Of a DNA stretch of 64,000 bases, positions 28,002 through 44,114 are shown in pieces; the first letter of the stretch is position 1, and every line of letters starts with the position of its first letter. The notes beneath the pieces were generated by a model. The model was not told the DNA's origin, searched no databases, and saw only the letters and a program-made list of their open reading frames with translations. Position numbers and translations under genes: made by a program. The stretch lies in sequence record LT598654.1; one strand, written 5' to 3'.

Positions 28002-28930
28002 TATTCGACTATCACATCAATCTGCTCAAAGGCTGCTATGTAATGGTTTTTGTAACCTAACAAACGCATCTTACGTTTGTTGACCAGCAGTTTAAACGGA
28101 AGAGGATCCATATCAACTGGCTCCTTACCTCGAAGAAAAAATTCTTGAACAACGGGAGAATAATCTAACTCGAATATTAGGCACTCGTTGTTCTGACCCG
28201 GCATGAAATTAAAACCTACAGTCAGGTGTCGCGTATTCCTTCGACTGATAATGTCTTTGATTTCCTGCATCTTTACCACAGTACCGAATTCGTTATCGGT
28301 AAGTGCAGTCATATTATTTACTATAACACCTCGTTGGTTTTTATTAAACGAGATAAGTAAGTCTTCCAACTGCTGAACGGTAGATACTTCATAGAACTTA
28401 ACTGTGTTAGCCAAGCCCTGCAAATTCTTTTTGAGATTAAAACTATCTCTTGCTGTTAAACCTGTGGTATCATATAAAACATAGTACGCATCAGGAAACA
28501 GATTCATTTCACTAATAGTTTGAACAAGTTCACGCGCTAGGTTTGAGACTCGGAATACGTAATCTCGGTCAACACCTTGTACGCCAGTTCTATTTATAAA
28601 CCAAGTTCGTGATTTGTATTCGGGAGGTAAGAGGGTTAATAAATGGGAGGTAGCATCTACTTCGTCTACAATAATTGTATTAGGTTTTAGCTTTTGAATA
28701 TCTAATGCAACAGAGTACATAAGCTGTTCTGAACTAGTACCTCCGTCACCGAACCCTAGTGAAATATATAGTGAGGAGACTTCTGACTGTTTGAATCTGG
28801 CTAGCTCTGATGCAAGAGGGTGTCCGTAGTAGGTAGCTAACGGTCTACTAGATACGATAAACGTTTCATTACCTGCCACAGCCTGTGCTGAGATAATCAA
28901 AGACGTAACTAATGGCAGGAATTTTTTCAT
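28001..28930 (-). CDS. secreted periplasmic solute-binding-protein-like (ABC_sub_bind-like)
   Basis: signal peptide MKKFLPLVTSLIISAQAVA; IQKLKPNTIIVDEVDA, YYVLYDTT and terminal LLVNKRKMRLLG resemble ABC_sub_bind proteins. Confidence 0.6.
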   Translation of the reverse strand: MKKFLPLVTSLIISAQAVAGNETFIVSSRPLATYYGHPLASELARFKQSEVSSLYISLGFGDGGTSSEQLMYSVALDIQKLKPNTIIVDEVDATSHLLTLLPPEYKSRTWFINRTGVQGVDRDYVFRVSNLARELVQTISEMNLFPDAYYVLYDTTGLTARDSFNLKKNLQGLANTVKFYEVSTVQQLEDLLISFNKNQRGVIVNNMTALTDNEFGTVVKMQEIKDIISRRNTRHLTVGFNFMPGQNNECLIFELDYSPVVQEFFLRGKEPVDMDPLPFKLLVNKRKMRLLGYKNHYIAAFEQIDVIVE

Positions 28931-29772
28931 TATATCTTAACCAGTATAGCTTTACCTGTCACAGGACCTGCGAAAGTAATCAAGCTTGTGTTATTATCGC
29001 TGCCTTCTATAACAGCAGCACTTACAGGAAGAACCTGTTCACCGTTTTCATCATACACCTGGTACATGATGTTATTAGTAGAAAACCCGTGTGGTATAAC
29101 CCAAGAGTCTGAGGGTTCTTCTTCAACGTGCGTGAACGCAACAATGTTAGTGCTACCTCCACCGCCTAGTTCAAGTTCATCTAGTCGTGCGGCGTTGTTA
29201 GCAGCAAGGGCTTCAACTCTACCTAAACGTTTATAGATAGTAACAACAATGTTGTAGAAGCCTTGTGTTTGGTCATTCTTTTCGTCAATTACAAATGATT
29301 TAGGAACTAACTCTTTAGAATCAAACTCCTCACCCGTTGCAAGAGTACGTGCATTCAAAGGTCCTTCGAGAGTATCACCTGTTCTATCTACCGCATTAGC
29401 CAGAGAATTGCCTAGCTGTTCTTCGGTATAAAGAGGAACAGGTGTGTCCTCTACTGCGTAATACTGAGGTGGATCGAATATAGCAGCATAAGCATCAAGC
29501 TCTACCCAAGTATGGTTGAAACCACCCGATGACGCTTTTGATGACCTTTTAAATGCACCCTTATAGTCTTCACTATCTGGGTCTCCGTCTATCCAAGTTA
29601 CGTTTAGAGGTAGTACCAAATTGTACGGTTCAGAGTAAGATACAACTACCAAAGTCTCAACCGAGTTTGCGTTCTCTTTAACCGATAACGTTATCGGATA
29701 ATTATCCGCAAGCCCTCGCCCTTCAGCAATGCTAACACATCTGTCTGCAAAATCTTGTAGTTGGAGACCCAT
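28930..29772 (-). CDS. fibre protein with C-terminal repeat domain
   Basis: AVDRTGDTLEGPL motif; HVEEEPSDSWVIPHGF repeat unit. Confidence 0.7.
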   Translation of the reverse strand: MGLQLQDFADRCVSIAEGRGLADNYPITLSVKENANSVETLVVVSYSEPYNLVLPLNVTWIDGDPDSEDYKGAFKRSSKASSGGFNHTWVELDAYAAIFDPPQYYAVEDTPVPLYTEEQLGNSLANAVDRTGDTLEGPLNARTLATGEEFDSKELVPKSFVIDEKNDQTQGFYNIVVTIYKRLGRVEALAANNAARLDELELGGGGSTNIVAFTHVEEEPSDSWVIPHGFSTNNIMYQVYDENGEQVLPVSAAVIEGSDNNTSLITFAGPVTGKAILVKI

Positions 29773-30274: not shown

Positions 30275-31117
30275 TTAATCTCCTAATGCAATCCAAGTAA
30301 AGTCCCAAACGTCTGAAAGAGGGAGCGTAAACGTTCCCTTAACACCTATTGTAAACCCACCAATATCAGAGTCTACATCAACAAAGTCTCCGATTTCATA
30401 ATTCTGAGCTTGGAAACTATACGGGTCATTGAAGAAAATCATAATAGAGGTAACCCGATTCACAAACGGCTCAGAGAAAAGAACAGTGACTTCTTCTGTA
30501 CCTGTGTCCTGAATATAACGACCCCACTCAATCATTGCACCAGACTCAATCATTCGAATGTAAGGGCTGCGACCTTGAGTAGTGTTACCTTCATCATCAG
30601 TTTCAGTAAACGTGTGAGAACCTTCTTGGTTTCGGATACCAGCAAAGTACTCAGGTTCGTTTCCGTCTGTACCCGTAGCACCTGTTGCTCCGGTAGGACC
30701 AGTAGGGCCTGCATTTCCTATAGGACCTTGTATTCCACGCTCACCCGTAGCACCTGTCGCACCCTTAGGACCTCTGTCTCCTTTAGGTCCTGCACAACCT
30801 TGAATGCCCGTAGCACCATCACGACCGTTACGTCCCGGAGTTCCTGCTTTACCTTCCTTACCTCTAGCACCTTGAGGACCGCTAGGTAAGTTGAGTTCTG
30901 TAGGGAGTCCTGATACTCGAACAGTTCTGTTATTGATCGTTATTGACAACACGCCTGACTGTTTATCAAAGTCGGCGGTAAACGTATCTAATGCCTCAGT
31001 AGCACTAGTACCAGGAGATTGTGTTTCCAATCCCTGATCTGTTTGTTGAACGAAGTCACCTGACTCTGAGCCTTCTGTGGGCTGAATCATACTCAGGCTT
31101 GGTTTAGTTAAACTCAT
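30275..31117 (-). CDS. collagen-like fibre protein with C-terminal gp53-type domain
   Basis: 25 Gly-X-Y triplets; MIEWGR...VLFSEPF C-terminal fibre motif. Confidence 0.85.
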   Translation of the reverse strand: MSLTKPSLSMIQPTEGSESGDFVQQTDQGLETQSPGTSATEALDTFTADFDKQSGVLSITINNRTVRVSGLPTELNLPSGPQGARGKEGKAGTPGRNGRDGATGIQGCAGPKGDRGPKGATGATGERGIQGPIGNAGPTGPTGATGATGTDGNEPEYFAGIRNQEGSHTFTETDDEGNTTQGRSPYIRMIESGAMIEWGRYIQDTGTEEVTVLFSEPFVNRVTSIMIFFNDPYSFQAQNYEIGDFVDVDSDIGGFTIGVKGTFTLPLSDVWDFTWIALGD

Positions 31118-31365
31118 TCTGCATCCTCAACTGGTAACGGCTCTAACCACAAAGGGTAGTCTGCATCATCGGCATCGTGAGCCGTAGTGTCATGCTCTGG
31201 ATTTCTTATTCGCGTGTTTTCAGGACCCATTACTATCCATTCTGAATTCTCAGCATTGCGTACCTTCCATCCTAATTGGTGAAAGTTATCTACGCCCCAC
31301 GGATTTAAACGGGTTCTGTCTCTTACACGGATTGTGACTTTTTTATCCGACGTTGGCATCGTCAT
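31114..31365 (-). CDS. small Trp-rich fibre module
   Basis: WKVRNAENSEWIVMGPENTRIRN is similar to the N-terminus of 34419-38546. Confidence 0.7.
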   Translation of the reverse strand: MTMPTSDKKVTIRVRDRTRLNPWGVDNFHQLGWKVRNAENSEWIVMGPENTRIRNPEHDTTAHDADDADYPLWLEPLPVEDAE

Positions 31366-31841
31366 AGTATTTCTACCTCGACGTTAAGTACCTTTGAATC
31401 TAGGTTTGTTATAGCTATCCAACCATTCTCAATTTCAAGTTCTAATTCCTGAGGGTCAATATCACCATAAACTGGTTTATTGTTACTATCTCGGATTAAA
31501 AATCCTGTGTAGTCAGGAAACTTTAGTTTGACTTTGGAAGCTTTGATAGCTACAGCTTGGAACTGACCAACCTTAACTCTACCAGATTCTGTTATAAATT
31601 CACTAGCATAAAGGTTAATGCTGTAGGACTCTGTGTGTGAAGTCTTGAGAACTGGCGAAATGCCAGCCTCAAGTTCCAGACAGTACTCATCATCTGTTAG
31701 TGTTAAATTACTGTGTTCCAGCGAAGATTCAATTGCAGTGCTAAACGATATGTAAGCAAAGCAAGGTTCTTCAACACTAGGTAGTACTAATTGCTTTGTC
31801 AGAGGTGTAGGTATATACCTACTATTCCATTCAATCTTCAT
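31362..31841 (-). CDS. hypothetical structural protein
   Basis: 159-aa beta-rich ORF in the operon. Confidence 0.7.
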   Translation of the reverse strand: MKIEWNSRYIPTPLTKQLVLPSVEEPCFAYISFSTAIESSLEHSNLTLTDDEYCLELEAGISPVLKTSHTESYSINLYASEFITESGRVKVGQFQAVAIKASKVKLKFPDYTGFLIRDSNNKPVYGDIDPQELELEIENGWIAITNLDSKVLNVEVEIL

Positions 31842-31848
31842 ACATCAC

Positions 31849-34410
31849 CTAGTCGTCAGGGCAGTTAAGTATAGGCTTGGCTTTATCTTTAGCCGACTGC
31901 GCATTTGCAGCTTGTACCGAAATAGTATTTGAAGGATCACCAGAACAGTAGGCGGTATACGTATTTAATGCTGCACTCTCAATTCGGTCATTAAGAGTGG
32001 TGGACGCACCTGTGTTATATTCTTCAAAACTTTCAAATGAACCTTCGCTTACAACGGCAGGTGCCGTATTGATAATATTCGTATAGCCTTCTTCTGCTGC
32101 GACACCGTTCGTTGACGTCCAAGTTGAAGAACCTGATATACGAACAACAGTTATCTTAAGGTCAGTAATGTGGCTAGGTACTGCACCGATCGTATCATTC
32201 CAAGAGTCACCTTCTGCTGCTGTTACCTCTGTAAGTGATATTGTGGTTGTTACCGCATCCCCTTCCAACGGATGGTCTGTCGGGTCGCTATCATAAGTAT
32301 AGAAAGTAGACGTACTAGAGTATCCGTCCGTAGCATCTGTAATATACAAGATACTAACCTTAGTCTGATTGGTCGGTACATTAGCAAGAACATGTGCAAC
32401 GTATGTAGTAAACATTGTTACAGATGCAAACTCACCACCTATGATATTAGCGGGGTCAATTGCATAATCATTTAGGATAGTTTGTATAGCAACATCACGA
32501 CTTGTTGTTACACCATTTGTAGTTACATCACTTGCGTTTGAGGTTGAACCACTCATATCACGGAATATATAGATAGTAAACTGCTCACCTTCACTAGCTA
32601 ATTCGACCGTCGTAACACTAGGTGAACTGTCTAAGATAGTACCGATACCTTCTGCTTTCGTAATACTTCCACGAGAAGGATTTGAGATAACAACTTTGAA
32701 TGTTTCGTCGTCTTCTTGAACGTCATCACATTTAACTGTTACCTGAACTGTCTTGGTTGTTTCACCCTCTGAGAATGTAACGGTTCCACTATTAGCCAAG
32801 TAGTCAGTACCTTCAGTTGCAGTTGCTCCCTGAGTTTCCCAATCAACGGTAACATCGCTACCTTCAATTGCTTCATCCGATGTAATGGTAAACGTTGCAG
32901 TTGTATCGGTATCGCTAGCACTGCACTCGTCTACATCCACATCACTGATAGAAAACCCTGTCTCATTACCTAGAGTCACGCAAGGCATTTCGAATGTGAG
33001 TACTGCATCGTCGCTATCACTAACACCAACCGTACCATAGTCGTTGTCTTCTACAGTAACAGATATATTGTAAGGCAACATGGCTCGGCTATCTACTTCC
33101 GCAACACTTCGACGTAGCGTAAACAAACCTACTCTACCGTTTTCTTCTGTACCTGTTAAAGACAGATTAGGGTGAGGAGCAGACCAAGTGTACGAGTAAT
33201 TACGCAGTTGCCAATCCGATGGGTCATTGAATTTAACTTCTACCCTAGCCGTTGCCTCATACGTGTCTCCTACGTTTAAGCATCTGTCTTCACACGGTAT
33301 TGTTTCATCTTCTACATCAGGAGGAGGCGGTAGAGGAGGATCAGGGTCTGGTTCAGCTTCTTCGTATTCCTGTACTGATTCTTTGTGGTAGATCTCCAGA
33401 GCTTTACCCCCGTTGACCCTGAACCACCAGAACGAACTCGATACAGTCCCACCTATTTCAGCCCAGTTATCACGACCACTACACGTAGCAAAACCCGCTG
33501 AACCACCTGCGTTATCTGCATACTGGATTAGAGTTCTGTCCAGATACATCTGACCCTGCATACATAATTCATCGTCACCGCGAGTATCGTCGGTAACAAA
33601 AATATACTCTTGGTCAAACGGTATCTTGGCTCTGGATATGTTTACTTTGCTTCCCTGAGGAGAACTATATTTAATCTTTTGCGTGAACGTATTGTAGTAA
33701 CCTAAGTTTTTGTTATACACCATAGGTCTTCGATAAATACGATACATTTTATGACCACCCGGACCTTTAAATTCAGTTCTAGGTGTAGTCGATAATCCGC
33801 TAAGTCTAAACCATTCATCCCATCCCTGGAAACCGCAGTACTTAACCATTCGACTATGGAGCTTGTTAGCGAATGAATAAGCCGATGCAAAGTTATAGAA
33901 GCTTACTGTAGCATAATATTTCTCGGTACTTGAACGGTCACATTTGACTACGAATAAGTATTCATAATCCTGTGCAAAATCACTCAGTACCAGAGTTCTA
34001 CCTTGTGATGTATTCCACAGTTCAAAAGTATGAGTGTTATCGTCGGGATGCAGGTTCCATACAGCAGGGTCTGGGTTTAGGTCGCGCTCCCAGATTTTCA
34101 ACATGTACGGATTACCTTTGGTTCTATAGAAATCAAATTTCTTATAACCATTGGAAGCTACCGTAGCCCTTGTTATTTGGTCGAGACCGTTAGACATAAA
34201 ACCGTCTGTAACATTAGAAGACGAGGGAGGCTGAATATCCATATCAGCAGGTATCTTGATAAACACGTTACCGATTTCGTCTTCCCTGTCGGTATCTACC
34301 ATGTGAATCATATATTCTTTGTTTGGTTGCCAGTCAAAAGGAACAGACCTAACCTGAGAGCTAGCGTTAGGTCTTGCCCAGACTTCAACCCATGGGTTGA
34401 TTATTGCCAT
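31849..34410 (-). CDS. adhesin-like virion protein with Calx-beta and vWA-like domains
   Basis: Calx-beta FSISDV...GTDY...GTVTF..GET.KTV.V....DD..E.DETF.V..SNP; DMSGS MIDAS motif and ILYITD. Confidence 0.8.
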   Translation of the reverse strand: MAIINPWVEVWARPNASSQVRSVPFDWQPNKEYMIHMVDTDREDEIGNVFIKIPADMDIQPPSSSNVTDGFMSNGLDQITRATVASNGYKKFDFYRTKGNPYMLKIWERDLNPDPAVWNLHPDDNTHTFELWNTSQGRTLVLSDFAQDYEYLFVVKCDRSSTEKYYATVSFYNFASAYSFANKLHSRMVKYCGFQGWDEWFRLSGLSTTPRTEFKGPGGHKMYRIYRRPMVYNKNLGYYNTFTQKIKYSSPQGSKVNISRAKIPFDQEYIFVTDDTRGDDELCMQGQMYLDRTLIQYADNAGGSAGFATCSGRDNWAEIGGTVSSSFWWFRVNGGKALEIYHKESVQEYEEAEPDPDPPLPPPPDVEDETIPCEDRCLNVGDTYEATARVEVKFNDPSDWQLRNYSYTWSAPHPNLSLTGTEENGRVGLFTLRRSVAEVDSRAMLPYNISVTVEDNDYGTVGVSDSDDAVLTFEMPCVTLGNETGFSISDVDVDECSASDTDTTATFTITSDEAIEGSDVTVDWETQGATATEGTDYLANSGTVTFSEGETTKTVQVTVKCDDVQEDDETFKVVISNPSRGSITKAEGIGTILDSSPSVTTVELASEGEQFTIYIFRDMSGSTSNASDVTTNGVTTSRDVAIQTILNDYAIDPANIIGGEFASVTMFTTYVAHVLANVPTNQTKVSILYITDATDGYSSTSTFYTYDSDPTDHPLEGDAVTTTISLTEVTAAEGDSWNDTIGAVPSHITDLKITVVRISGSSTWTSTNGVAAEEGYTNIINTAPAVVSEGSFESFEEYNTGASTTLNDRIESAALNTYTAYCSGDPSNTISVQAANAQSAKDKAKPILNCPDD

Positions 34411-34418
34411 ACAACTTC

Positions 34419-37400
34419 CTAGTGTTTTTGATCAACAGGGGCGTTATGAACAAGAACAGGATTCTTACCTGCGTAATAAGTATCGTTTTCTTCAACGTCA
34501 ATCACGATTACATCCAATCGATCTTTAACATGACGTAGAGTTCCAACGTGAACTTCATTACCGTTCATTCCAAGAAGCTTATCGCCCATCTTAATATCAC
34601 GCACATCCAACCAGTGCCACGTATCATCACGCTTAACCAGGATGTGGTGCTGTTGGGTAATCTTCAAGTCGCTATTGATAACCCAGTACTCTTTGTACCA
34701 GTTCATCTTAGCACTCTTAACCGTTGACGCAACATTAGAAGAACCTTCAAGTGATTGAGTTGTCCAATCTTCCCAGCCTTCTGTGTTTTCGTCAATCATA
34801 CCTGGAATTTGTCTTCCTATGATTTCATCACCAGGTCTTAGAAGTTCAGCAATCTTGGTAGTACCGTCAGCCATTAGAATAGGTGTATCTAAAGCTACAC
34901 ACCCACCGCCGCCTCCGCCAGAGTAAACATTTGCTTTCTGTTGGATAGTGACTGTAATTGGACTAGACTTCTGTACGTTACCTAAATCATCTTTAACAAA
35001 TATTTCTACTTCAAAGATAGCTGTTCCTGCCTGAGTTGTACTAGCAGTAGTCCACTCATAAGCAATAGACAGTCTATCATTGTTGGCATGGTATTCATCG
35101 TAAGGAACAAACGACCATGTATCTCCGTAACCATCTTCGTTTTCAATATAGAAAGCGCAATACGGAAGTATTAATATACGGTTAGCTGCATTAGGTATTG
35201 TTGCTGTGCTCCTTGTTACCGACCATTTGTATTCATAGGTACGCGCAGGATCGAATTCGAATTCTGCACAAACACCTGATACCATTGAATTAGCAGGACT
35301 CAACGTAGGTGAACTAACAGTCGTTTGAGTTTCTGTCATTGTCATATACGCAACAGAACCGGCGTCCTCAGTGTAAGAAACATCGGCATACTGGAGTTGT
35401 GTAGTACCTTCGTTAGCCCAACTGTAATTGATTGCGTTCGCATTTATTTTAAGCGCAACAATCGTTTCGGGATGCGAGTAAGTGGTAGAACTTACTAAAG
35501 CTGTACCTACCGAAGTAAGCGAATCTTTAACAATGTTCATATCACCGCTTGCACTAGTCGCAGTACCTTCCAGTATAGTACCTGTGCCTTCGCCTCTACC
35601 TATTACACCTGCACTTGGATTAGAGATAACAACCTTAAACGTTTCATTAGGGTCGCTTACTGTATCCGTGAAAGTGTTGACAGGAATCTCGGCACTACCT
35701 GCACCTGCTGGAATTGTCAGGGTTCCGCTTGTAGACTGGTAATCTACTTGGTCGCTACTACCACCTGAATTAGTTCCACCGACTGTGCTCAACGAGAACA
35801 AACTCATTAATGCCGCGTCTTCCTGTAGGTCAAGGATGTTGGTTACACTCATGCTGTCCCACAAGTAAGAGTTGTTTCCTGCATAGTCAATAATTGACTG
35901 AACAGAGATACCGTCGGTAGTACCCATACCAGTCGCAGTAGTGTTATAACCAATGTCAACGTCTTCACTGATTCCTAACGCATTAATAATACTCTTTGCG
36001 TTGGTATTCATTTTATAGAACAGGTCTGTATACGAACTCTTTGGACTGAAACCCGCAGTTGCAATAATAACTTTAGGGTCATTGGAGTTCTTAGCCATTC
36101 TGCTTAGTGCGACGGCAAAAGCACTAGACTGTCCTAAGTTGAACACTTTGTTTTTGTAGCTGTTCAGGTCAGATATATCACTGTTTTCATTAACGTGGTG
36201 ATTAATCAAACCGAATTGGTCTACAACAACAATGTCGTAGTCATTGAGAATATCTTTATGGCTCTTCCATGTTCCGCTATCAGGATCAATTGTGGTACGA
36301 CTGTAACCGTGAGGTCCGTAGTAGTTGATTACCTCAGTATCTACCGTAATTCCATAAATATTGGAAAGCGATTCTGTCATGTGACCCATTGCAGTAGTCA
36401 TATCATAAACAGCATCTTCTGTCACACGACCGCCGTAGTAATCGTCACGCTCAATATACGAATACTGCCAAATACGTTGGTGAGAAAGAACCAACATTTT
36501 AATCGAACTATTAAGAGTACCGAACCTGTCTTTCAAAAGGTTGGCAATCATTTTGTAGTAAGGCGGTAATTCGTTAAACGAGTTAACTGCTATATCGGTA
36601 TTAGAGATAACATCCTCTTGGTACACACCTGCAAAGTAGTTCATTTGCGTAGTACCAGAAGTACCGAACGGCCCGTACAGACGGTTAGGGTTTGCTTCTA
36701 GCAATAGTGTGTAGTTGTAGGTTTCATCTTTGTATACAGCACTAGTGATGATTCCTTCTTCACGATACAGAGGATACGGATTACCTACAGCAGGAACTGC
36801 GTCAGGACTAGACTGTGCTGTACCGTCCACTGTTGTATACTGAACCGTAATAGGATCAGATTGAGGTACGTTTAAGCTTACAACAAATCGTGCTTGCTGA
36901 CCTTCATACGCAAAAGCATCATTGATATTAATCTCAATATCAGGACACGCATCAATGGTTTGGTCATCAATCTGAATATCCAACAGAGGAATATAACAAC
37001 CTACCAAGTAGTTCCAGCTTGCATCGATAGGACAGTCAATACGTACACTAACATCAAGCAAGTCATCATAGTTGTCATTCGCCTCTAACCTGAACCACTG
37101 AATGTACTGAGTACCGGTTCCTTGTTTGGCAGCAACAACATTACCTTGCGCATCAATAACACTAGCAACATACTTGAAGTCACCGTACCCAACAACCTTA
37201 ACACTAGCAACACTGTCACCAATATCGTTCATTGTGTAATGGTCTTCTGTGCTGTAGTGACCTGCGCTGGTAATACCACTCGGAGGCTGCTCACAGTTCC
37301 AACGATTTTCTTTGTAGCCCTGCCTGTTTGCGTCATACAGCATGTATTCGTAGGACTCAATATCCGCACCATACTCACGTTGCTGAGCCATTACTTTAAC

Positions 37401-38546
37401 TACAATGTCAGGAACAGGATTTTCAAATCTCCACGGGTCAAAGACGATACTCATTAACCCATCTTCAAACTTGGTTTCTAAGGTAGACGCGATACGCTCA
37501 CCGCCGTGATAGACTTCAACCCAGTCACCGTTATCCCACGTTTCGTAGTTTAGATGCAGCACATAAGGTCCTGTGCTTGGGTCAAGTAATCCTACGTTGT
37601 GTACGTACTCCGTCCAGTATTGACCATTGTTCTGACGTTCACTGAAAGGATAAACTCTGGAATGTGTTGGTGCAGGAAATAAGCTAGTACCAATATACTC
37701 AGTTGTTCGTATTTGAGCCAAGTGTATATTGTTACCAGGTTCAAACACAGGCAAGTTCAAAACTTTCTTAGGCCCAATTACAGAATACATCCAGCGTTGC
37801 TTTTCTTCACTACGTATTCTGATCATCACACGGTCTTCACCGCTTCCGATTGCTGGGTCAAGAGTGAATTCTAACTTGCCTCTACCTGTTACACGACCAC
37901 ACGTACTGGCAATCAAGGCACCTAGATAGTAAACATCAACACTCATTCCGTACGTAGAATAAGAAGCGTAGCAGATTTCAAATATACCTGCTAAGTCTCC
38001 ACATTCGTAGATGGTTTCTGCGATAGCACTACCATTACTGAACGTATGAGTCCAACACATTGCTGGGTTCTCATAAGTACCGTGACCCAAGAAACTATTT
38101 GTTCCTGGATACGTATAGCTTTCTTTTGTGCCGTCGAGTCCTGGACGTTTGATAGCTTTACCCTCAAACGTTCCGAATGTTTTCTCAACACCGAAGCCTA
38201 CTTCACCTGCATCTGGTAAGTCGTAACCTGCAGGATAGCCTGTTAAGATATTGAACTCAGCACCGTCCGAGCCAACTCCGTTACCCGAGCCAGCTTCTTC
38301 TAAGGGAATACTACCACACGCAACACTTGCCAAGCTTGCTGCTGTACCGCAAGGGTTATCTAATATAGGGTCATAAGTACAGTCTACTGCTAACCACGTT
38401 GTGTTTCCGCTGTCCCGTATATGGGTTTGTTCTGGATAGAAACGAATCCAATTGCTGTTAAAACCGTCTCTGAAATAAAACTCAGAGTTACATTGGTCTA
38501 ACCAGCCATTGTCTAATGCGTTTCTTACTGTAAGTCTAGTACTCAT
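34419..38546 (-). CDS. large fibre/adhesin with split Calx-beta and C-terminal Hint domain
   Basis: 1375 aa; Calx-beta halves around an insert; GGGGG-CVALDTPILMADG...TQQH...VHN-A. Confidence 0.85.
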   Translation of the reverse strand: MSTRLTVRNALDNGWLDQCNSEFYFRDGFNSNWIRFYPEQTHIRDSGNTTWLAVDCTYDPILDNPCGTAASLASVACGSIPLEEAGSGNGVGSDGAEFNILTGYPAGYDLPDAGEVGFGVEKTFGTFEGKAIKRPGLDGTKESYTYPGTNSFLGHGTYENPAMCWTHTFSNGSAIAETIYECGDLAGIFEICYASYSTYGMSVDVYYLGALIASTCGRVTGRGKLEFTLDPAIGSGEDRVMIRIRSEEKQRWMYSVIGPKKVLNLPVFEPGNNIHLAQIRTTEYIGTSLFPAPTHSRVYPFSERQNNGQYWTEYVHNVGLLDPSTGPYVLHLNYETWDNGDWVEVYHGGERIASTLETKFEDGLMSIVFDPWRFENPVPDIVVKVMAQQREYGADIESYEYMLYDANRQGYKENRWNCEQPPSGITSAGHYSTEDHYTMNDIGDSVASVKVVGYGDFKYVASVIDAQGNVVAAKQGTGTQYIQWFRLEANDNYDDLLDVSVRIDCPIDASWNYLVGCYIPLLDIQIDDQTIDACPDIEININDAFAYEGQQARFVVSLNVPQSDPITVQYTTVDGTAQSSPDAVPAVGNPYPLYREEGIITSAVYKDETYNYTLLLEANPNRLYGPFGTSGTTQMNYFAGVYQEDVISNTDIAVNSFNELPPYYKMIANLLKDRFGTLNSSIKMLVLSHQRIWQYSYIERDDYYGGRVTEDAVYDMTTAMGHMTESLSNIYGITVDTEVINYYGPHGYSRTTIDPDSGTWKSHKDILNDYDIVVVDQFGLINHHVNENSDISDLNSYKNKVFNLGQSSAFAVALSRMAKNSNDPKVIIATAGFSPKSSYTDLFYKMNTNAKSIINALGISEDVDIGYNTTATGMGTTDGISVQSIIDYAGNNSYLWDSMSVTNILDLQEDAALMSLFSLSTVGGTNSGGSSDQVDYQSTSGTLTIPAGAGSAEIPVNTFTDTVSDPNETFKVVISNPSAGVIGRGEGTGTILEGTATSASGDMNIVKDSLTSVGTALVSSTTYSHPETIVALKINANAINYSWANEGTTQLQYADVSYTEDAGSVAYMTMTETQTTVSSPTLSPANSMVSGVCAEFEFDPARTYEYKWSVTRSTATIPNAANRILILPYCAFYIENEDGYGDTWSFVPYDEYHANNDRLSIAYEWTTASTTQAGTAIFEVEIFVKDDLGNVQKSSPITVTIQQKANVYSGGGGGGCVALDTPILMADGTTKIAELLRPGDEIIGRQIPGMIDENTEGWEDWTTQSLEGSSNVASTVKSAKMNWYKEYWVINSDLKITQQHHILVKRDDTWHWLDVRDIKMGDKLLGMNGNEVHVGTLRHVKDRLDVIVIDVEENDTYYAGKNPVLVHNAPVDQKH
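34443..34901 (-). other. Hint (BIL/intein-like) domain 1
   Basis: block A Cys1, block B TxxH, block F DVEENDTYYAG, terminal HN; +1 residue is Ala. Confidence 0.88.
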
Positions 38547-38554
38547 AATAGCCC

Positions 38555-39049
38555 TTAGACAGGTTTAATCCAAAGAGCGCCTGCTCCAACGGGGCCTGGA
38601 TCACTATCGCTGATATAGATAGCAACACGACCATCGAGTCCTGCTAAACCTCTTTCACCTTGAGGTCCGCTCGGTCCTTGTTCACCCTGTTTACCTTGTG
38701 GTCCACGTACACCGCGTTCGCCTTGAGCACCCTGCGGCCCTTGACAGCCCCGCTTACCCTGCAAGCCTTCTTCGCCGATAATACCATCGACACCTGCTGT
38801 ACCTGATACACCTTGAGGTCCTTCTGAACCTGAACCTACATCACTTTGAGTCATAAAGTTTTTGATGGTTAGTGTATCGTAGCCCGGTATCGAAAGAGTT
38901 AGTGTACCAGTTACGTTATCAAACGTTCCTGATATTTGAGAGGAATCGTTGCTGTCTGCTGTTACAGTTAAACCGGTTCCTGTATTCTCTACATCCCCAC
39001 TAACTGTACCTGCTTGAATCATTTTTAAACTAGGTTTAGTTAAGCTCAT
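38555..39049 (-). CDS. collagen-like fibre protein
   Basis: MSLTKPSL start shared with 30275-31117; about 23 Gly-X-Y triplets. Confidence 0.85.
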   Translation of the reverse strand: MSLTKPSLKMIQAGTVSGDVENTGTGLTVTADSNDSSQISGTFDNVTGTLTLSIPGYDTLTIKNFMTQSDVGSGSEGPQGVSGTAGVDGIIGEEGLQGKRGCQGPQGAQGERGVRGPQGKQGEQGPSGPQGERGLAGLDGRVAIYISDSDPGPVGAGALWIKPV

Positions 39050-39058
39050 ATCTATACC

Positions 39059-39697
39059 CTACGCAAATTGGTCTAAGTCGTCGTCATACTGACCGATAGC
39101 TGGATTGACCCATATCGCACCAGGTCCTGCTGACGCACCTGGATCAGTTTCAGAGATAATAATGTTGATAGTACCTGCAGGACCTTGATCTCCTTGCGGA
39201 CCAGTAGGACCTGTTTCTCCTGTAGGACCTGTTATTCCCACTTTACCTTGAGGACCTTGTGCTCCAGTAGGACCGCGCTCACCCATAGGGCCTTGTACAC
39301 CTTGAGGGCCGGGAGGACCAACTTGTCCGGGTCTTCCATCTTCACCTCTAGGTCCTTTGTCTCCGGTTGGTCCTACAGGTCCTGCACAACCTTCGGGACC
39401 TTCTTCGCCGTCCCTTCCATCACGACCGTCCTGACCGTCTAAGCCTGGTTCACCCTGAGGCCCTTGAGGTCCTTCTGGTATACTATCGAAAGTAGGGAAT
39501 CCTGTAATAGCAACATCCTGACCATTGGAGAATGTTAGTGTTAGGACTCCGCTTCCCTGATCATAAAAGCCAGCGGTTATCTCACTGGCTGTTGTTACTG
39601 TTTCGTCACTTGATTTAAGCTTGCCTGATTCGACAACAACGGCACTACCGTCGGCACCGCTTGCTTTAATCATCGACACTGGAATTCGTGTAAGCAT
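39059..39697 (-). CDS. collagen-like fibre protein
   Basis: about 34 Gly-X-Y triplets; IIISETDPG..GAIW tip motif. Confidence 0.85.
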   Translation of the reverse strand: MLTRIPVSMIKASGADGSAVVVESGKLKSSDETVTTASEITAGFYDQGSGVLTLTFSNGQDVAITGFPTFDSIPEGPQGPQGEPGLDGQDGRDGRDGEEGPEGCAGPVGPTGDKGPRGEDGRPGQVGPPGPQGVQGPMGERGPTGAQGPQGKVGITGPTGETGPTGPQGDQGPAGTINIIISETDPGASAGPGAIWVNPAIGQYDDDLDQFA

Positions 39698-40158
39698 CAG
39701 TCTACCTTGTTGTGAACTAGTATGCCGTTCATAAAGAAAGAATCAAACATACATACTTTTAAATCCGAACTCTGCGCTCTTTCCGTAATATACTCATGCG
39801 ATACTACTTCAACTGTTTCAAGCTTGTCGTTCATAAGTAGGTCACCGATTCTAACTGACTTAGGCATAACCCATTGCCAGATGGAATTGCGACACACGAA
39901 CAGAGGATAGCCCGTTACAAAGTGCATAGTGTTTATTTTGAAGTAACCCTCACGGTAGCTGTCTGTGCGCCTTGAAACAAAACTCTCACAAAGAAAGATT
40001 GAATCACGGTTCTCTGTAGCCCAATCCATTACCGCATAATCATTACCGTAACGAGAACCGGGCATGTTAGGAATTCTAACGCACGAAACCACATCACCGA
40101 AGTGTAAGTCCCTTGCATTTCGTTTACTGTTAACGCATGTGATTACTTGTTTCAACAT
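39697..40158 (-). CDS. stand-alone degenerate Hint-like protein
   Basis: ARDLHFGD, VRIGDLL and FFMNGILVHN match Hint blocks; Cys1 and TxxH absent. Confidence 0.7.
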   Translation of the reverse strand: MLKQVITCVNSKRNARDLHFGDVVSCVRIPNMPGSRYGNDYAVMDWATENRDSIFLCESFVSRRTDSYREGYFKINTMHFVTGYPLFVCRNSIWQWVMPKSVRIGDLLMNDKLETVEVVSHEYITERAQSSDLKVCMFDSFFMNGILVHNKVD

Positions 40159-41678
40159 TATTTTTTCGCCACCATTACTGCGTTATGAATACACACAGGA
40201 CTTACACCACCGAAATAGTTATCGTAAGGTTCTGCGTCTATTATAACAACGTTGATAGGTTCGTTTATTTGTTTGATTGACTCTACCTGGACTTCGGATT
40301 CTTTTCCGAACAATGTATCGCCTACCTTAATGGATTCAGCACCATGCCATCCCCACTGATCACCACTCTTTATTAGCAAGGGGTGCTGCTCGGTAATTTT
40401 AACATCATCGTTGATAACCCAATACTTGTCATACGTAGTGTGCATAGCAACCCTGGCTATAGTAGGTACTGTCTTAACATCACTGAGTTGTGTTGCTTTC
40501 CAGTCCTTCCAACCGGGTTCAGATTCGTCAAGCATTGAATCACAGGTAAATGCCTGTAACGTATCACCTACTTTAATATGCTTGGCTTTGACTTTCTCTC
40601 CAGACCAGAGCAAGATTGGTGTATCTTCGTGAACACAACCTCCGCCTCCTATTACGATAGGTGCTCCCTCTTCCTCTTCTTCATCTGTAGTCCTAGAATT
40701 AGAACCTGTGAATCGAAAGGTTATTCCGTCGATAACATGTTTCTTATTGGAGTTACCTGTATCAGTTATAGTGAGTTTAACATCACCTGAGTACGAGAAG
40801 CTTTCACCTGGATCAATAACAACATAGCAGGTTATCTTGAGGCTTTTGTTTGTAACAGAACCGTCTATGCTAACGTCACTAGAGTTGAGGCTACCATCTA
40901 CCTGTTGCCAATTATACTTGAAAGGACCGACACCCCCTGAGAAATTACTCAGTACAAGAGTTACCGAACCTCCATAGCTGTCAGTAGTAACCAAACTCAG
41001 ATTAGCACTCTGGTCGCTGACACTTCCTTTCATATCTGCTATTTCTATAACAGGTGCTTCTACAACAACACCGTCTTCATAAGGTACAGCCCAGATAAAG
41101 TAGTTGTCAGGTGGAATATCAGAACCGTAGTATGCGTCACCGCTTGCTGTAGGTCCTGTTTCTCCTTTAGGACCTATCAAACAACTTGGTCCTGTCGGTC
41201 CTATAGGTCCTTGGAATCCTATAATACCGGGTTCACCTTCAGCACCTCTCGGTCCCGGGCTTCCGACAGGACCGTATAGACCCGTGATGCCTAATTCACC
41301 ATCGTCACCGTCTAAGCCTGCCTCACCTACAATTCCTTTGACACCTTGTGGGCCTTCACATCCTGTTTTACCTTCTTTTCCTATTCTACCTAGTCTTCCA
41401 GGCTTTCCGTTTTTACCTGCAACTCCCTTAGTACCTCGAGGACCTTCACCTAGCTGAGCTACAGTTAAAAACCCTGTGACGGTTAATAGTTCACCGTTAG
41501 TTCGAACAAAGTTTAATTCGCCTGTCTTTTTGTTAAAACCTACTTGCGATATAAGTAACTCACTTGTAGGTTCTTCCGATGAATATTCTATAAGACCTGA
41601 CGTTGTATTTACTTTCAGTGTAGTACCGTCACTTCCGTCCTTAGGTACTACACTGTTAATGTTAGCTTCTTGTGCCAT
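40158..41678 (-). CDS. collagen-like fibre protein with C-terminal Hint domain
   Basis: about 32 Gly-X-Y triplets, Ig-like domain, GGGG-CVHEDTPILL...TEQH...IHN-A. Confidence 0.85.
   Translation of the reverse strand: MAQEANINSVVPKDGSDGTTLKVNTTSGLIEYSSEEPTSELLISQVGFNKKTGELNFVRTNGELLTVTGFLTVAQLGEGPRGTKGVAGKNGKPGRLGRIGKEGKTGCEGPQGVKGIVGEAGLDGDDGELGITGLYGPVGSPGPRGAEGEPGIIGFQGPIGPTGPSCLIGPKGETGPTASGDAYYGSDIPPDNYFIWAVPYEDGVVVEAPVIEIADMKGSVSDQSANLSLVTTDSYGGSVTLVLSNFSGGVGPFKYNWQQVDGSLNSSDVSIDGSVTNKSLKITCYVVIDPGESFSYSGDVKLTITDTGNSNKKHVIDGITFRFTGSNSRTTDEEEEEGAPIVIGGGGCVHEDTPILLWSGEKVKAKHIKVGDTLQAFTCDSMLDESEPGWKDWKATQLSDVKTVPTIARVAMHTTYDKYWVINDDVKITEQHPLLIKSGDQWGWHGAESIKVGDTLFGKESEVQVESIKQINEPINVVIIDAEPYDNYFGGVSPVCIHNAVMVAKK
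40182..40637 (-). other. Hint (BIL/intein-like) domain 2
   Basis: Cys1, TEQH, DAEPYDNYFG, HN; paralogue of Hint 1. Confidence 0.88.
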
Positions 41679-41681
41679 AGA

Positions 41682-44114
41682 TTACCCCAAGTTTGGAGAA
41701 ACGTCTACAATCAAGTTAACCAATAAACGTGAACCATAGTCACTGACTGAACCATTACGAACACGCATCTTAGCAACAACATCGATATATCCGCTCGGCA
41801 TGTTTGCTTTCTTCAAACTCCAGCTTTGTGAAATAGATTTATCCGCATAAGCATACGTACCTTGTTTGTCCGGATTAGTAACAGAGAAACCAGTTTCACC
41901 AGTACCTTTTATGTTACGTCCGTATTCAGGTTCGTTGATAGAGTGCGTTTTAAAACCAAGTACAAACTGAACTGCTTCTAGTCCTTCGTTACTGCTAAAA
42001 CCTGGCCCGAGTCGAGCAGAGAAATCCGCAGTTGCTTTAACCGTTACATCGCCTTTGAATGTTACGCGAGTGGTATAGATAATTTCTTCTGCGTTATCTA
42101 ACCTGTGTTGGTTGTTGAATACCTGAGGACTATCTTTAGCAATCTGTTGGCTCAACGTAGACGTAACTGTGTACTCAGGAAATGTTCCTGTTACTTTAAT
42201 ACCGTCACCTGCTTTGATATTAAATTTGGGAACAGGTAATCGAATACGGTCAGCATTATGTCGGATAAGTTCAATGCTCTTGGACGTAACCACTGCTTCT
42301 GTGACAACACCGTTGATAGAAGTATCCGCATTACCCTCGGACAGAACGTTACGGAAAATCATAACCTCTATTTCGGTGTTTGCATCAATATCACGACGAA
42401 CAATAAGTCTGTCATCTACAATGTCAAACAAAGAACGGTTAACGTGCATACCCTGCTCACTCATAAACACCAAACCTTTGTCACTAGGTGCAAAGGGTAA
42501 TTGGATGATACGAGTTAAATCTTTTGTTGTGTAACACGCCGTATGAATATGTGTAGCGTAACCTACAACACTTTCGGTTACTAGAGCATTAACTTCAACT
42601 TTAAGACCTTGCAAAGGAGGACTGGTAAACACAATCTTTTGGTTCTCAACATCGATAACATACGTGTTGATACTTTGTAAGAATGGGTCTACATAAACCA
42701 AGCACTGATCAGGACTTGTAATCTGCTCACTCCCTACAACAGGAATATCAAATTCTGTTTGCGAACCATCTGCAATGTATTCGGCGTAACGGATATTTAA
42801 TAGTGCGCCTGTACTAGGACTTAGGTGGAACAGTCGTGCATCTACCTGTGTTTCGTTCGGTAAATCTTCTGAGAATTCAATAGTGTTCTCAGTGATTTCA
42901 AACGCATCCCGATGCTGGTTAATACCACCTAATGCGATGATTGCATAGTTGTTGTTTTTGGTATGCGAGTACTTGTGGATTTGAGCCTTTTCATTTGTGG
43001 TCTGGCTTAAATCTTTTGAATACAGTTCAAAAGTACGTTGACCCGCGGAGTCTTCGGCTGCTGTTATATAACTAGCGACACGTAACTCACCAGGTGGATG
43101 GTATAGCGTAGAACCATTGTTAGATGCTTTAAGAGGCGGAACCCAACGAGGAGTAGACACACCGCGCTCCAACACATAGTTGCTAGGTACATCACTCATT
43201 GGGATGATTGTACCGTTGCTTGCTTCGGTTGTCTGCCAAATAGAAACAACTGACGCATCTTCCAAGTCACTAAATCCATCTACGAAAGCAGTGAAGCGAT
43301 AAATCTCTCCGCTAGGTACTGCTGTAAATCTGCGTGTCTGACCAGCACCCGCTCCAGTGATCACCTGTACAATAACAAGTTCACCATCCGAGAAGTCTGT
43401 GTTGTCGTTGGCTTCGGGACATTCAAAACCGCTAGGTCCTGTTACGTTACCGTCACCAAGTACACCAGTAAACACGCGCTTGTGACCAGTGAAAGACCAA
43501 TGCGCTCCACCCGCTCCAAACTGCTGTGCAATCCCTGGCGTTGTAGAACCGTCTGGACTAACCAGAATATCCTGCACACCTACGACATTAGCAATAGCCT
43601 CAATCGGACTAGGCAAGTCATCGATACTCATTACACTGGGAATACCTGAATATTCACTTAGCGTAACATCGATAAGAGCAGCTTTGTTTTCGGTTAGGCT
43701 GAACAGTACTTCCAGTCTAAGACCTTCGTTGCTTCGTTTGACATAAGGCGTAGAGTAGACGCAATGCCCTAAACAAGTACCGTCTTTATCCTGAATGATT
43801 AATTCACCAATATTAACACTCGGTACGATACCGTCTGACGTATTACTGTCTACTGGAATACCTTCAGGAATGTCAATAGTGAACCGTACTGTAGCGGCAC
43901 CTACTACTTGAATGTAGCTAATGTTTCCTGTGTGGACAACATTACTTGTGATCGTTGTTGGGATTCCGCCCTGTGACTGATAAAAGTCTTCTGCGCTGGA
44001 GACACTGAGGTCTCCAACTTGGAAGTACTTAGGAGCTACAAGAATACCACCTGCATCAGCATCGGCAAGTGCTTGTAATCCGTCGGCGGTTATGTTTAGA
44101 GTATCTGGTGTCAT
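41682..44114 (-). CDS. tail-fibre/baseplate attachment protein
   Basis: N-terminal IT..GL.ALA.A...G.......F.VGD tail-collar (gpH-like) start; repeated ADGSQTEF-type beta modules. Confidence 0.7.
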   Translation of the reverse strand: MTPDTLNITADGLQALADADAGGILVAPKYFQVGDLSVSSAEDFYQSQGGIPTTITSNVVHTGNISYIQVVGAATVRFTIDIPEGIPVDSNTSDGIVPSVNIGELIIQDKDGTCLGHCVYSTPYVKRSNEGLRLEVLFSLTENKAALIDVTLSEYSGIPSVMSIDDLPSPIEAIANVVGVQDILVSPDGSTTPGIAQQFGAGGAHWSFTGHKRVFTGVLGDGNVTGPSGFECPEANDNTDFSDGELVIVQVITGAGAGQTRRFTAVPSGEIYRFTAFVDGFSDLEDASVVSIWQTTEASNGTIIPMSDVPSNYVLERGVSTPRWVPPLKASNNGSTLYHPPGELRVASYITAAEDSAGQRTFELYSKDLSQTTNEKAQIHKYSHTKNNNYAIIALGGINQHRDAFEITENTIEFSEDLPNETQVDARLFHLSPSTGALLNIRYAEYIADGSQTEFDIPVVGSEQITSPDQCLVYVDPFLQSINTYVIDVENQKIVFTSPPLQGLKVEVNALVTESVVGYATHIHTACYTTKDLTRIIQLPFAPSDKGLVFMSEQGMHVNRSLFDIVDDRLIVRRDIDANTEIEVMIFRNVLSEGNADTSINGVVTEAVVTSKSIELIRHNADRIRLPVPKFNIKAGDGIKVTGTFPEYTVTSTLSQQIAKDSPQVFNNQHRLDNAEEIIYTTRVTFKGDVTVKATADFSARLGPGFSSNEGLEAVQFVLGFKTHSINEPEYGRNIKGTGETGFSVTNPDKQGTYAYADKSISQSWSLKKANMPSGYIDVVAKMRVRNGSVSDYGSRLLVNLIVDVSPNLG

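What the first reader, a model, noticed from the sequence alone, without database searches (positions are those of the whole stretch)
30275..41678. Four collagen paralogues all place a Cys in the 10th Gly-X-Y triplet
Each has the same N-terminal domain ending xFxT(6 aa)G, then nine triplets, then G-C-[A/Q/A/E]-G-P (Cys codons at 30794, 38744, 39386, 41358), although total collagen length varies from about 23 to 34 triplets. The first nine triplets are acidic in 39059 and basic in 40158. Fixed register plus charge complementarity suggests disulfide-locked heterotrimers or bundles. The Cys could alternatively be a thiol acceptor for Hint-generated thioesters (speculative).
Basis: partly seen in the sequence, partly recalled or inferred. 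Interest (0 to 1): 0.7.

Follow-up and report, generated by a model that had tools for sequence, protein, structure and literature searches.

The report
Conserved cysteine staple in phage collagen fibres
Four collagen-like fibre proteins of a giant marine phage and its relatives keep one cysteine at exactly the same height on the rod. Together with matching charges, this suggests the rods are pinned side by side by disulfide bonds, much as animal C1q and collagen VI are.

Summary
The window is Phage NCTB (LT598654), a "Lupandier-group" jumbo myophage. Its tail/baseplate module encodes four paralogous collagen-like proteins:
- A, 30275-31117
- B, 38555-39049
- C, 39059-39697
- D, 40158-41678

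Each has a homologous ~75-aa N-domain, then nine Gly-X-Y triplets, then Cys in the X position of triplet 10.

Across 146 distinct homologues from phage genomes and metagenomes, 137 (94%) keep that Cys. It is the only near-invariant non-Gly column.

Triplet numbers are fixed per paralogue: B 23, C 34, D 29 plus a Cys break plus 3, and A 24-25 (44-53 in Lu11-like phages).

New evidence:
- A second Cys at triplet 20 occurs in both C and D (14 genomes) or in neither (27), never in only one.
- The net charges of the D and C rods are anticorrelated after phylogenetic correction (r = -0.68, p = 9e-7). A and B show a weaker anticorrelation.
- In an ideal triple helix, X-position Cβ atoms of different chains lie 8-9 Å apart, so these cysteines cannot pair within one helix.

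Best reading: the rods lie in register, side by side (D with C, probably A with B), and are stapled by inter-helix disulfides. The heterotrimer idea is weaker. The Hint-thioester idea is not supported. No disulfide has been shown directly.

The parts
30275..31117 (-). Paralogue A, 280 aa. N-domain aa 1-79 (30881-31117). Collagen of 25 triplets, aa 80-154 (30656-30880). Cys108 at X of triplet 10 (codon 30794-30796). C-terminal ~126-aa gp53-like tail-fibre head.
   Evidence: (Collagen E 1e-14; Gp53-like_C weak, E 0.009, but on record for orthologues). GenBank calls it 'FliK', probably because of the low-complexity collagen repeat.
38555..39049 (-). Paralogue B, 164 aa. N-domain aa 1-73. Collagen of 23 triplets (38624-38830). 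Cys102 (codon 38744-38746) is the only Cys in the protein. 22-aa C-terminal cap ...VAIYISDSDPGPVGAGALWIKPV.
   Evidence: (B aligns to C with one 11-triplet gap).
39059..39697 (-). Paralogue C, 212 aa. N-domain aa 1-75. Collagen of 34 triplets (39167-39472). Cys104 (codon 39386-39388) is the only Cys in the protein. Acidic start (-6 over triplets 1-9). C-terminal cap ...INIIISETDPG..GAIWVNP.
   Evidence: (AF2: strands 40-64 of the N-domain at pLDDT ~90).
40158..41678 (-). Paralogue D, 506 aa. N-domain aa 1-78. Collagen of 29 triplets (41184-41444), basic start (+7 over triplets 1-9). Cys107 (codon 41358-41360). Cys166 sits in the Gly position of 'triplet 30' (codon 41181-41183), followed by 3 more triplets. 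Then a middle domain, then GGGG|C and a C-terminal intein-like Hint domain (about 40161-40634).
   Evidence: (phrog_38766 'virion structural protein', full length, E 7e-59).
39697..40158 (-). 153-aa ORF between D and C. It is related to the Hint domains and ends ...ILVHNKVD, but has no G|C nucleophile junction at its start. A neighbour, not shown to be part of the Cys system.
   Evidence: (phrog_38766, positions 389-469). The same ORF is present in L010 and L046.
41682..44114 (-). Conserved ~780-810-aa protein immediately upstream of D in every related genome. It is the probable baseplate or collar component next to which the fibres are encoded. Used here as the marker for the species tree.
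   Evidence: (phrog_21488, E 8e-182). The PaBG orthologue has a computed mass of 83.57 kDa, close to the 83.5-kDa virion band reported in PMC7412058 Table 1.

Best explanation
A, B, C and D are collagen-like fibre or strut proteins of the tail/baseplate module of Lupandier-group jumbo myophages.

Each most likely forms its own parallel triple helix. This is anchored by a homologous ~75-aa N-terminal domain, so all four rods start at the same axial level.

The invariant Cys lies in the solvent-exposed X position of triplet 10, about 8 nm from the start of the rod. From there it points outward and forms disulfides between neighbouring helices, not within one helix.

D and C have the same frame length (33-34 triplets) and oppositely charged N-terminal halves. 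They lie side by side in register. In about a third of lineages they are stapled a second time at triplet 20, about 16.6 nm out. A and B (24-25 and 23 triplets) probably form a second, weaker complementary pair.

The disulfides would form after lysis, outside the reducing cytoplasm. They would lock a C1q-stem-like bundle from which the different C-terminal parts emerge: the A head, the B and C caps, and the D domain with its self-cleaving Hint.

Shown here: the conservation, the register, the Cys20 co-occurrence, the charge co-evolution and the geometric exclusion of intra-helix pairing.
Inferred: homotrimer composition, oxidation state, the actual partners and the location on the virion.
For: (1) Cys10 is present in 137 of 146 distinct homologues and is the only conserved non-Gly column. 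It is present in 39 of 40 proteins from ten related phages in conserved synteny. It is the sole Cys of most B and C proteins.

(2) Cys20 is present in both C and D in 14 genomes, in neither in 27, and in only one in 0. It changes state 6 times on the tree, and every independent pair is concordant. The flanking triplets of C and D share only 0-30% X/Y identity, so gene conversion is not the cause.

(3) Net charge of triplets 1-9 in D versus C: Spearman -0.77, p = 2.8e-9. Independent contrasts give r = -0.68, p = 9e-7, with 26 contrasts opposite in sign and 1 the same. In control pairs only B-A is also negative (r = -0.46, p = 0.009); D-B, D-A, C-B and C-A are not significant.

(4) Ideal-helix geometry: X-X Cβ distance between chains is 8.0-9.1 Å, against 4.5-5.2 Å for X-Y. 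The model reproduces the known 8.6 Å rise per triplet.

(5) Triplet numbers are fixed per paralogue. D and C share frame length and the same post-collagen cap.

(6) D has Cys in the core (Gly) position at triplet 30, or a three-Cys cluster in the Lu11 type. This fits D chains being linked to each other, i.e. at least two D chains per helix.

(7) Precedent: C1q stems are parallel bundles of collagen helices with N-terminal disulfides (PMC11869133).
Against: - No direct evidence that any of these thiols is oxidised. Phage proteins fold in a reducing cytoplasm.
- Cys10 can be lost singly: D in JA29 and L052, B in L048 and L050. Pairing at level 10 is therefore not strictly one to one.
- The Cys20 co-occurrence rests on only 4 well-supported independent transitions (6 on the full tree). 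The sign test gives p = 0.125 for the four; six concordant pairs would give 0.03 by my own calculation.
- Charge complementarity, equal length and frequent single Gly-to-Ala breaks in D are also what a mixed C/D heterotrimer would show.
- No collagen protein is among the 14 Coomassie-visible virion bands of PaBG.
- The position on the virion is unknown.
Confidence: 0.45

Rival explanations
1. Mixed heterotrimers. C and D chains (and perhaps A with B) co-assemble in one triple helix, as C1q A/B/C or collagen I α1/α2 do. Opposite charges drive chain selection. The exposed cysteines then link such heterotrimers to each other or to the baseplate.
For: D and C have homologous N-domains, the same 33-34-triplet frame and the same post-collagen cap at the same position. 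Their charges co-evolve in opposite directions, which is the known design principle of collagen heterotrimers (established knowledge). D often carries a single Gly-to-Ala/Gln break that C never has, and such a break is easier to tolerate if only one chain per helix has it. The Hint domain sits on C instead of D in L048.
Against: Cysteines in X positions of one helix cannot pair (8-9 Å). The strict both-or-neither pattern of Cys20 in C and D would therefore have no direct explanation. D's Cys in the core position of triplet 30, and the three-Cys cluster of Lu11-type D, suggest D-D links. B (23 triplets) and A (24-53) cannot share a full-length helix with C or D.
Confidence: 0.2
2. Cys10 links each fibre to a non-collagen partner (a baseplate or sheath protein), or to the same paralogue at the neighbouring symmetry position. 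There is no A-B-C-D bundle. The shared register only reflects a shared docking module.
For: All four paralogues share the N-domain plus a G[KR]D-G[KR]D-GRD-GRD-x-x-GCx-GPx motif, as expected for one common docking site. Cys10 can be lost from one paralogue without loss from the others.
Against: The conserved ~780-aa neighbour has no invariant Cys. This reading does not explain the C-D Cys20 co-occurrence or the pair-specific charge co-evolution.
Confidence: 0.15
3. Transient folding staple. The cysteines form short-lived interchain disulfides that set the chain register during trimer assembly, as reported for the P22 tailspike, and are reduced in the mature fibre.
For: Precedent in the P22 tailspike cysteine annulus (PMC3357383, abstract). 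A collagen helix needs its register set. There is one Cys per chain at a fixed level.
Against: The caps at the C-terminal end look like the trimerisation and nucleation elements. A within-trimer role does not predict co-variation between two different genes.
Confidence: 0.08
4. Cys10 is the thiol acceptor for thioesters generated by the Hint domains of D and of the 1375-aa neighbour.
For: Hint domains with intact Cys1, TxxH and HN motifs sit in the same module in NCTB. JA29 D lacks both Hint and Cys10.
Against: PaBG, Lu11, HRDY3, L049-L052, L054-L057, L059-L064 and L067 have no Hint domain within the fetched module, yet nearly all their paralogues keep Cys10; the exceptions are B in L050 and B and D in L052. 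An internal Cys would give only a labile thioester (chemistry, inference).
Confidence: 0.03

Closest known systems
C1q and other defence collagens (collectins, adiponectin): the 'bouquet' stem
   Same: Paralogous chains are encoded side by side. Parallel collagen helices are bundled in register at the N-terminal end and covalently held by one cysteine per chain at a fixed level, then diverge to different heads (PMC11869133).
   Different: In C1q the cysteines lie in the short segment before the Gly-X-Y repeat, and the trimers are ABC heterotrimers of equal length with gC1q heads. Here the Cys is inside the helix (X of triplet 10), the rods differ in length, and no gC1q or lectin domain is detected. 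There is no homology beyond the collagen repeat.
Collagen VI (and the 7S region of collagen IV): cysteines within the triple helix that fix lateral association of helices
   Same: Single cysteines inside a triple-helical domain are used for inter-helix, not intra-helix, disulfides that set a supramolecular register (from established knowledge; collagen VI assembly into dimers and tetramers is mentioned in the PMC2116307 abstract).
   Different: In animals the association is antiparallel or staggered, extracellular, and aided by ER oxidation. Here it would be parallel and in register, in a virus assembled in bacterial cytoplasm.
Collagen-like phage tail and baseplate fibres (e.g. 80α FibU gp68; collagen-like minor tail proteins; PHROGs 8745, 5073, 1806)
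   Same: Gly-X-Y rods in tail-fibre genes of tailed phages. There are strong PHROG hits and a PDB hit to 6v8i gp68 over the collagen part.
   Different: No cysteine or disulfide is mentioned for FibU. More distant proteins with the related pre-collagen hairpin motif lack the triplet-10 Cys. The four-paralogue set with fixed lengths is specific to the Lupandier group.
Bacterial intein-like (BIL) / Hint domains (PDB 2LWY)
   Same: The C-terminal domain of D, and of the 1375-aa neighbour, has Gly|Cys1, TxxH and terminal HN motifs. Its profile hits 2LWY at E 8.8e-10 and inteins at 1e-5 to 1e-7.
   Different: It sits at the very C-terminus with a 6-8-residue tail and, in NCTB, no +1 nucleophile (HN-A). 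Self-cleavage rather than splicing is therefore expected (inference). It is not linked to the Cys10 feature.

Membership tests
Collagen triple-helix repeat proteins (Pfam PF01391) | Uninterrupted Gly-X-Y repeats scoring above the Pfam gathering threshold | tested here: met
   All four score 54-64 bits against a cut-off of 27.2. Runs are 23-34 triplets long.
Collagen triple-helix repeat proteins (Pfam PF01391) | The chains actually form a trimeric triple helix | not testable with these tools
   Only monomer AF2 was available. The collagen part was modelled as extended chain at low confidence.
Phage collagen-like tail fibre / virion structural proteins (PHROG 38766, 8745) | Sequence membership, and a location in a tail/baseplate gene module | tested here: met
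   D matches phrog_38766 at E 7e-59 over its full length. C matches phrog_8745 at E 3e-38. Synteny with PAAR, gp25-like, Baseplate_J and tail sheath genes.
Phage collagen-like tail fibre / virion structural proteins (PHROG 38766, 8745) | Presence in the virion | not tested
   The only evidence is record annotations of orthologues as 'virion structural protein'. These proteins are not among the 14 PaBG bands.
Defence-collagen (C1q/collectin) bouquet | gC1q or C-type lectin head domain | tested here: not met
   No such Pfam domain is found in A-D. PDB profile hits are to the collagen part only.
Defence-collagen (C1q/collectin) bouquet | Inter-trimer disulfides that hold a parallel collagen stem bundle | not testable with these tools
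   Indirect support only: geometry, Cys20 co-occurrence and charge co-evolution.
Hint / bacterial intein-like domain (C-terminus of D) | Conserved Cys/Ser1 after Gly, TxxH block and terminal His-Asn, plus profile similarity to solved Hint domains | tested here: met
   C4, T85, H154 and N155 are invariant in alignment A5. The profile hits 2LWY at 8.8e-10, 4o1s at 5.7e-7 and the RadA intein at 1.5e-5. Single-sequence Pfam PT-HINT is below threshold (19.5 against 27.7 bits).
Hint / bacterial intein-like domain (C-terminus of D) | Autocatalytic cleavage at the Gly|Cys junction | not testable with these tools
   Would need expression and MS of D.

The most novel reading that the evidence does not exclude
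Lupandier-group jumbo phages build a covalent hetero-bundle of distinct collagen triple helices on their baseplate. Two electrostatically matched pairs (D with C, A with B) are docked in register by a shared N-module and stapled by inter-helix disulfides at 8 nm, and in some lineages also at 16.6 nm. This would be a viral, convergent counterpart of the C1q stem or collagen VI assembly, and possibly the unexplained 'hairs' or basal structures of the 'hairy Myoviridae'.
Probability: 0.35. Interest if true: 0.7.

Novelty: new variant of a known kind. Interest (0 to 1): 0.55.

Why it matters
Collagen-like phage fibres are common. I found no description of a fixed-register cysteine, a co-varying second cysteine or co-evolving rod charges in the papers searched.

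If the staples are real, this is a simple, genetically tractable system of collagen helices that recognise and lock onto each other. That is useful for understanding higher-order collagen packing, which is still poorly understood even for C1q (PMC11869133), and for designing self-sorting collagen materials.

It also gives concrete candidates and testable contacts for the fibres of the 'hairy Myoviridae', whose proteins are stated to be unknown (PMC6143709). It may also bear on the low thermal stability reported for PaBG.

Tried and rejected
- **PDB profile search with N-domain plus 12 triplets.** Only collagen-repeat hits, nothing for the N-domain.
- **Representative search with the same profile.** The top 150 were flooded by long collagens. 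About 47 true N-domain homologues were recovered by re-scoring with an N-domain-only HMM.
- **The search for related loci with wide alignments.** The single-protein scan of IMG/VR returned mostly unrelated collagen genes, with only L010 a true relative.
- **AF2 monomer of C and Foldseek against PDB.** The N-domain core is a confident small β-meander, but there is no meaningful structural match (best E 0.17).
- **Gene conversion as the cause of the Cys20 co-occurrence.** Rejected.
- **Charge complementarity as an NCTB-only quirk.** Rejected. It holds family-wide, with sign reversals in some lineages.
- **Hint dependence of Cys10.** Rejected.
- **PaBG virion proteome.** The collagen proteins are not among the identified bands, so it gives no evidence either way.
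- **Search for 'axial/spindle fibril' to identify PDB 8zxl.** Led nowhere.
- **Second dihedral set.** I labelled it '10/3-like', but it actually gave 50° per triplet. It therefore serves only as a second near-7/2 model. The idea that Cys10 and Cys20 share an azimuth (10 triplets = one repeat of a 10/3 helix) remains an untested thought.


Full report
**Identity and context**

The window is 100% identical to Phage NCTB, LT598654.1, a 257.9-kb circular genome from surface water. PMC7412058 places NCTB with PaBG, Lu11 and the Dickeya and Erwinia jumbo phages in a 'Lupandier group'.

The region lies in the tail/baseplate module. Related genomes show the same gene order:
- PAAR, gp25-like, Baseplate_J-like and a large tail protein
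- a conserved ~780-aa protein
- D, C and B
- one or two very large Calx-β proteins
- A, then a ~160-aa protein, and so on

Day et al. call these phages 'hairy Myoviridae'. They state that the proteins forming the hairs are unknown and that the annotated tail fibres of 272, 164 and 210 aa are candidates. Those are the A, B and C orthologues.

**The observation**

Four minus-strand ORFs contain the only Gly-X-Y runs of the window:

| Paralogue | Coordinates | Length | Collagen triplets |
|---|---|---|---|
| A | 30275-31117 | 280 aa | 25 |
| B | 38555-39049 | 164 aa | 23 |
| C | 39059-39697 | 212 aa | 34 |
| D | 40158-41678 | 506 aa | 29, then C-L-I, then 3 more |

Each starts with a homologous ~75-aa domain ending [FL]-x-T plus six residues. 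Triplets 1-9 carry net -6 in C and +7 in D. The description is therefore accurate in every detail.

**Conservation**

I collected homologues from four sources:
- eight annotated phages (L002-L009)
- IMG/VR (L010, L073-L115)
- contigs that encode database hits (L046-L053)
- JGI metagenomes (L054-L072), plus cluster representatives at 50% identity or less (P0001-P0164)

All were scored with an HMM of the N-domain alone. Of 146 distinct proteins, 137 have Cys in X of triplet 10. That column has an entropy of 0.46 bits. The next most conserved columns are Asp at Y of triplet 7 (1.10 bits) and Pro at X of triplet 11 (1.83 bits). All other columns are at 1.96 bits or above.

Elsewhere in the collagen parts Cys is rare (0.65% of X/Y positions) and confined to a few fixed places: X of triplet 20, Y of triplet 28, and the Gly position of triplet 30 in D. 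TGT and TGC are used about equally. In most B and C proteins this is the only cysteine in the chain.

More distant proteins share only the pre-collagen hairpin motif (...DGT-x-T-x-x-F-x-[DN]G-x-x-F-T-T...GPQG) and do not have the Cys. The feature is therefore specific to this four-paralogue family.

The number of triplets is also fixed per paralogue across the lineage: B 23, C 34, D 29 plus a break plus 3-5 in frame, and A 24-25 (44-53 in the Lu11 branch). B aligns to C with a single 11-triplet gap. B, C and D share a short post-collagen cap, x-I-[IV]-[IV]-S-x-x-[DNEQ]-P...G-x-[IL]-W-[VI]-x-P in B and C.

**What the cysteine can and cannot do**

I built an ideal triple helix from backbone dihedrals recalled for (Pro-Pro-Gly)10. 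It reproduced the known 8.6 Å rise per triplet, a 50-58° turn per triplet, and a Gly Cα radius of 1.4-2.1 Å.

In that model the Cβ atoms of X-position residues on different chains are 8.0-9.1 Å apart. The well-known X-Y cross-strand contact is 4.5-5.2 Å. A disulfide needs roughly 4.5 Å or less. Three X-position cysteines at one level therefore cannot pair inside one helix, whatever its chain composition. They point outward, where a neighbouring parallel helix at the usual 13-15 Å axis spacing could reach them (inference).

**Two independent signs that D and C touch in register**

First, an extra Cys at X of triplet 20. It is present in both C and D in 14 genomes and in neither in 27, out of 41 non-identical genomes. 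It is never present in only one.
- On a tree of the conserved upstream protein the trait changes six times.
- The four independent pairs on well-supported branches, and six on the full tree, are all concordant.
- With so few events the sign test gives only p = 0.125 for the four supported pairs. Six concordant pairs would give 0.03 by my own calculation. The naive Fisher value of 1.9e-7, from the earlier 26-genome set, ignores relatedness.
- NCTB itself lacks Cys20 in both proteins, while its closest relatives (L010, L046) have it in both.
- The neighbouring triplets of C and D are dissimilar (0-30% X/Y identity), so this is not gene conversion.

Second, net charge. The charges of triplets 1-9 of D and C are anticorrelated: Spearman -0.77, p = 2.8e-9.
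- Phylogenetically independent contrasts give r = -0.68, p = 9e-7, with 26 contrasts of opposite sign and 1 of the same sign.
- In some lineages the polarity is reversed, with D acidic and C basic (L050, L051, L059, L113).
- Among the six possible pairs only D-C shows this strongly. B-A shows it weakly (r = -0.46, p = 0.009) and the other four not at all.
- D and C also share the same frame length and cap position.

**Mechanism proposed**

The four rods start at one level because they share a docking N-domain. D pairs with C, and probably A with B, through opposite charge. The exposed cysteines at about 8 nm (and about 16.6 nm where present) form inter-helix disulfides once the particle leaves the reducing cytoplasm.

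D additionally carries Cys in the core position at triplet 30, or a three-Cys cluster in Lu11-type phages. These can only be close to the same residue of sister chains. That argues for at least two D chains per helix, and so for D homotrimers rather than C2D.

I put this reading at about 0.45. A mixed C/D heterotrimer (0.2) would explain the charges and equal lengths equally well, but not the both-or-neither Cys20 pattern. Links to a non-collagen partner (0.15) or a transient folding staple as in the P22 tailspike (0.08) remain possible.

Single losses of Cys10 show that pairing at level 10 is not strictly one to one: D in JA29 and L052, B in L048 and L050.

**The Hint idea**

The C-terminal 160 residues of D, and of the 1375-aa neighbour at 34419-38546, are a genuine Hint/intein-like domain. 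Gly|Cys1, T of TxxH and the terminal His-Asn are invariant. The profile hits the solved bacterial intein-like domain 2LWY at 8.8e-10, as well as several inteins.

However, Hint domains are absent from the fetched module in PaBG, Lu11, JA29, HRDY3 and many metagenomic relatives. Nearly all of the collagen paralogues in those genomes still carry Cys10. In L048 the Hint sits on C instead of D. The Cys10 feature is therefore independent of Hint. The Hint most likely just cleaves itself off (inference).

**Comparison and novelty**

The closest functional analogues are the C1q/collectin stem bundle and the cysteine-fixed lateral assemblies of collagen VI and IV. The closest relatives by sequence are ordinary collagen-like phage fibres.

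The family fails the membership test for defence collagens: it has no gC1q or lectin head, and its Cys is inside rather than before the helix. It may nevertheless work like them.

I found no mention of collagen or of these cysteines in the papers on this phage group, nor a disulfide in the one solved phage collagen-like fibre paper read.

I rate it a new variant of a known kind, of moderate interest. The sequence statistics are strong. The chemistry (oxidised or not, and with what partner) is entirely untested.

Noticed in passing
window 34419-38546 (-): A 1375-aa protein with a Calx-β domain ends in GGGGG|C plus a second Hint/intein-like domain, 39% identical to the one on D. GenBank starts this CDS later (record 96419-100333) and calls it 'large intein domain protein'. 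Its N-terminal 530 aa match phrog_26008.
   Followed up: partly
window 39697-40158 (-): A stand-alone 153-aa ORF between D and C is related to the Hint domains and ends ...LVHNKVD, but lacks the Gly|Cys start. It is conserved in the NCTB relatives L010 and L046. It could be a degenerate or split Hint. Its function is unknown.
   Followed up: partly
L048 10001-11170; L005-L009, L066 and L071 D orthologues: The Hint domain moves between fibre paralogues. It sits on D in the NCTB and Erwinia/Dickeya/Yersinia branches and on C in L048. It is absent from the fetched module in the PaBG and Lu11 branches and in JA29.
   Followed up: partly
alignment A4; window 38555-39049 vs 39059-39697; P0050: B equals C minus exactly 11 triplets. 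Separately, a metagenomic C variant (P0050, 178 aa) is a close relative of P0001 that has also lost 11 triplets (34 to 23), which moves the triplet-20 Cys to triplet 9. This could be a real recurrent deletion or an assembly collapse.
   Followed up: no
L059 13670-14746; L088; L113; L066 4228-5136: Some relatives carry extra paralogues. One has 33 triplets, Cys10 and a 179-737-aa C-terminal part, between D and C. In L066 there is an N-domain protein with only 6 triplets.
   Followed up: no
window 30275-31117 and 28930-29772: Probable misannotations in public records. A is called 'Flagellar hook-length control protein FliK'. Orthologues of 28930-29772 are called 'HNH endonuclease' (phrog_24148), although the N-terminal part also matches tail-protein PHROGs and the gene sits among fibre genes.
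   Followed up: no
D orthologues in L003, L048, L049, L050, L056, L063, L066, L067, L071, L072: D, but never C or B, repeatedly has a single Gly replaced by Ala or Gln inside the collagen run, at triplets 5, 6, 8 or 16.
   Followed up: no
P0020, P0044, P0069, P0137, P0138 and others: Many long, unrelated collagen-repeat proteins share a hairpin motif just before the first Gly-X-Y (DNGDGTFT-x-x-FSDGT-x-FTTP-x-LTGPQG). It resembles the core of the N-domain here and may be a general collagen-nucleating or junction element.
   Followed up: no
L002 7793-10111 (PaBG): The ~780-aa protein upstream of D has a computed mass of 83,569 Da. This is close to the 83,518-Da 'base plate wedge subunit' band in the PaBG virion proteome (PMC7412058 Table 1), so this neighbour is probably an abundant virion protein.
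   Followed up: partly
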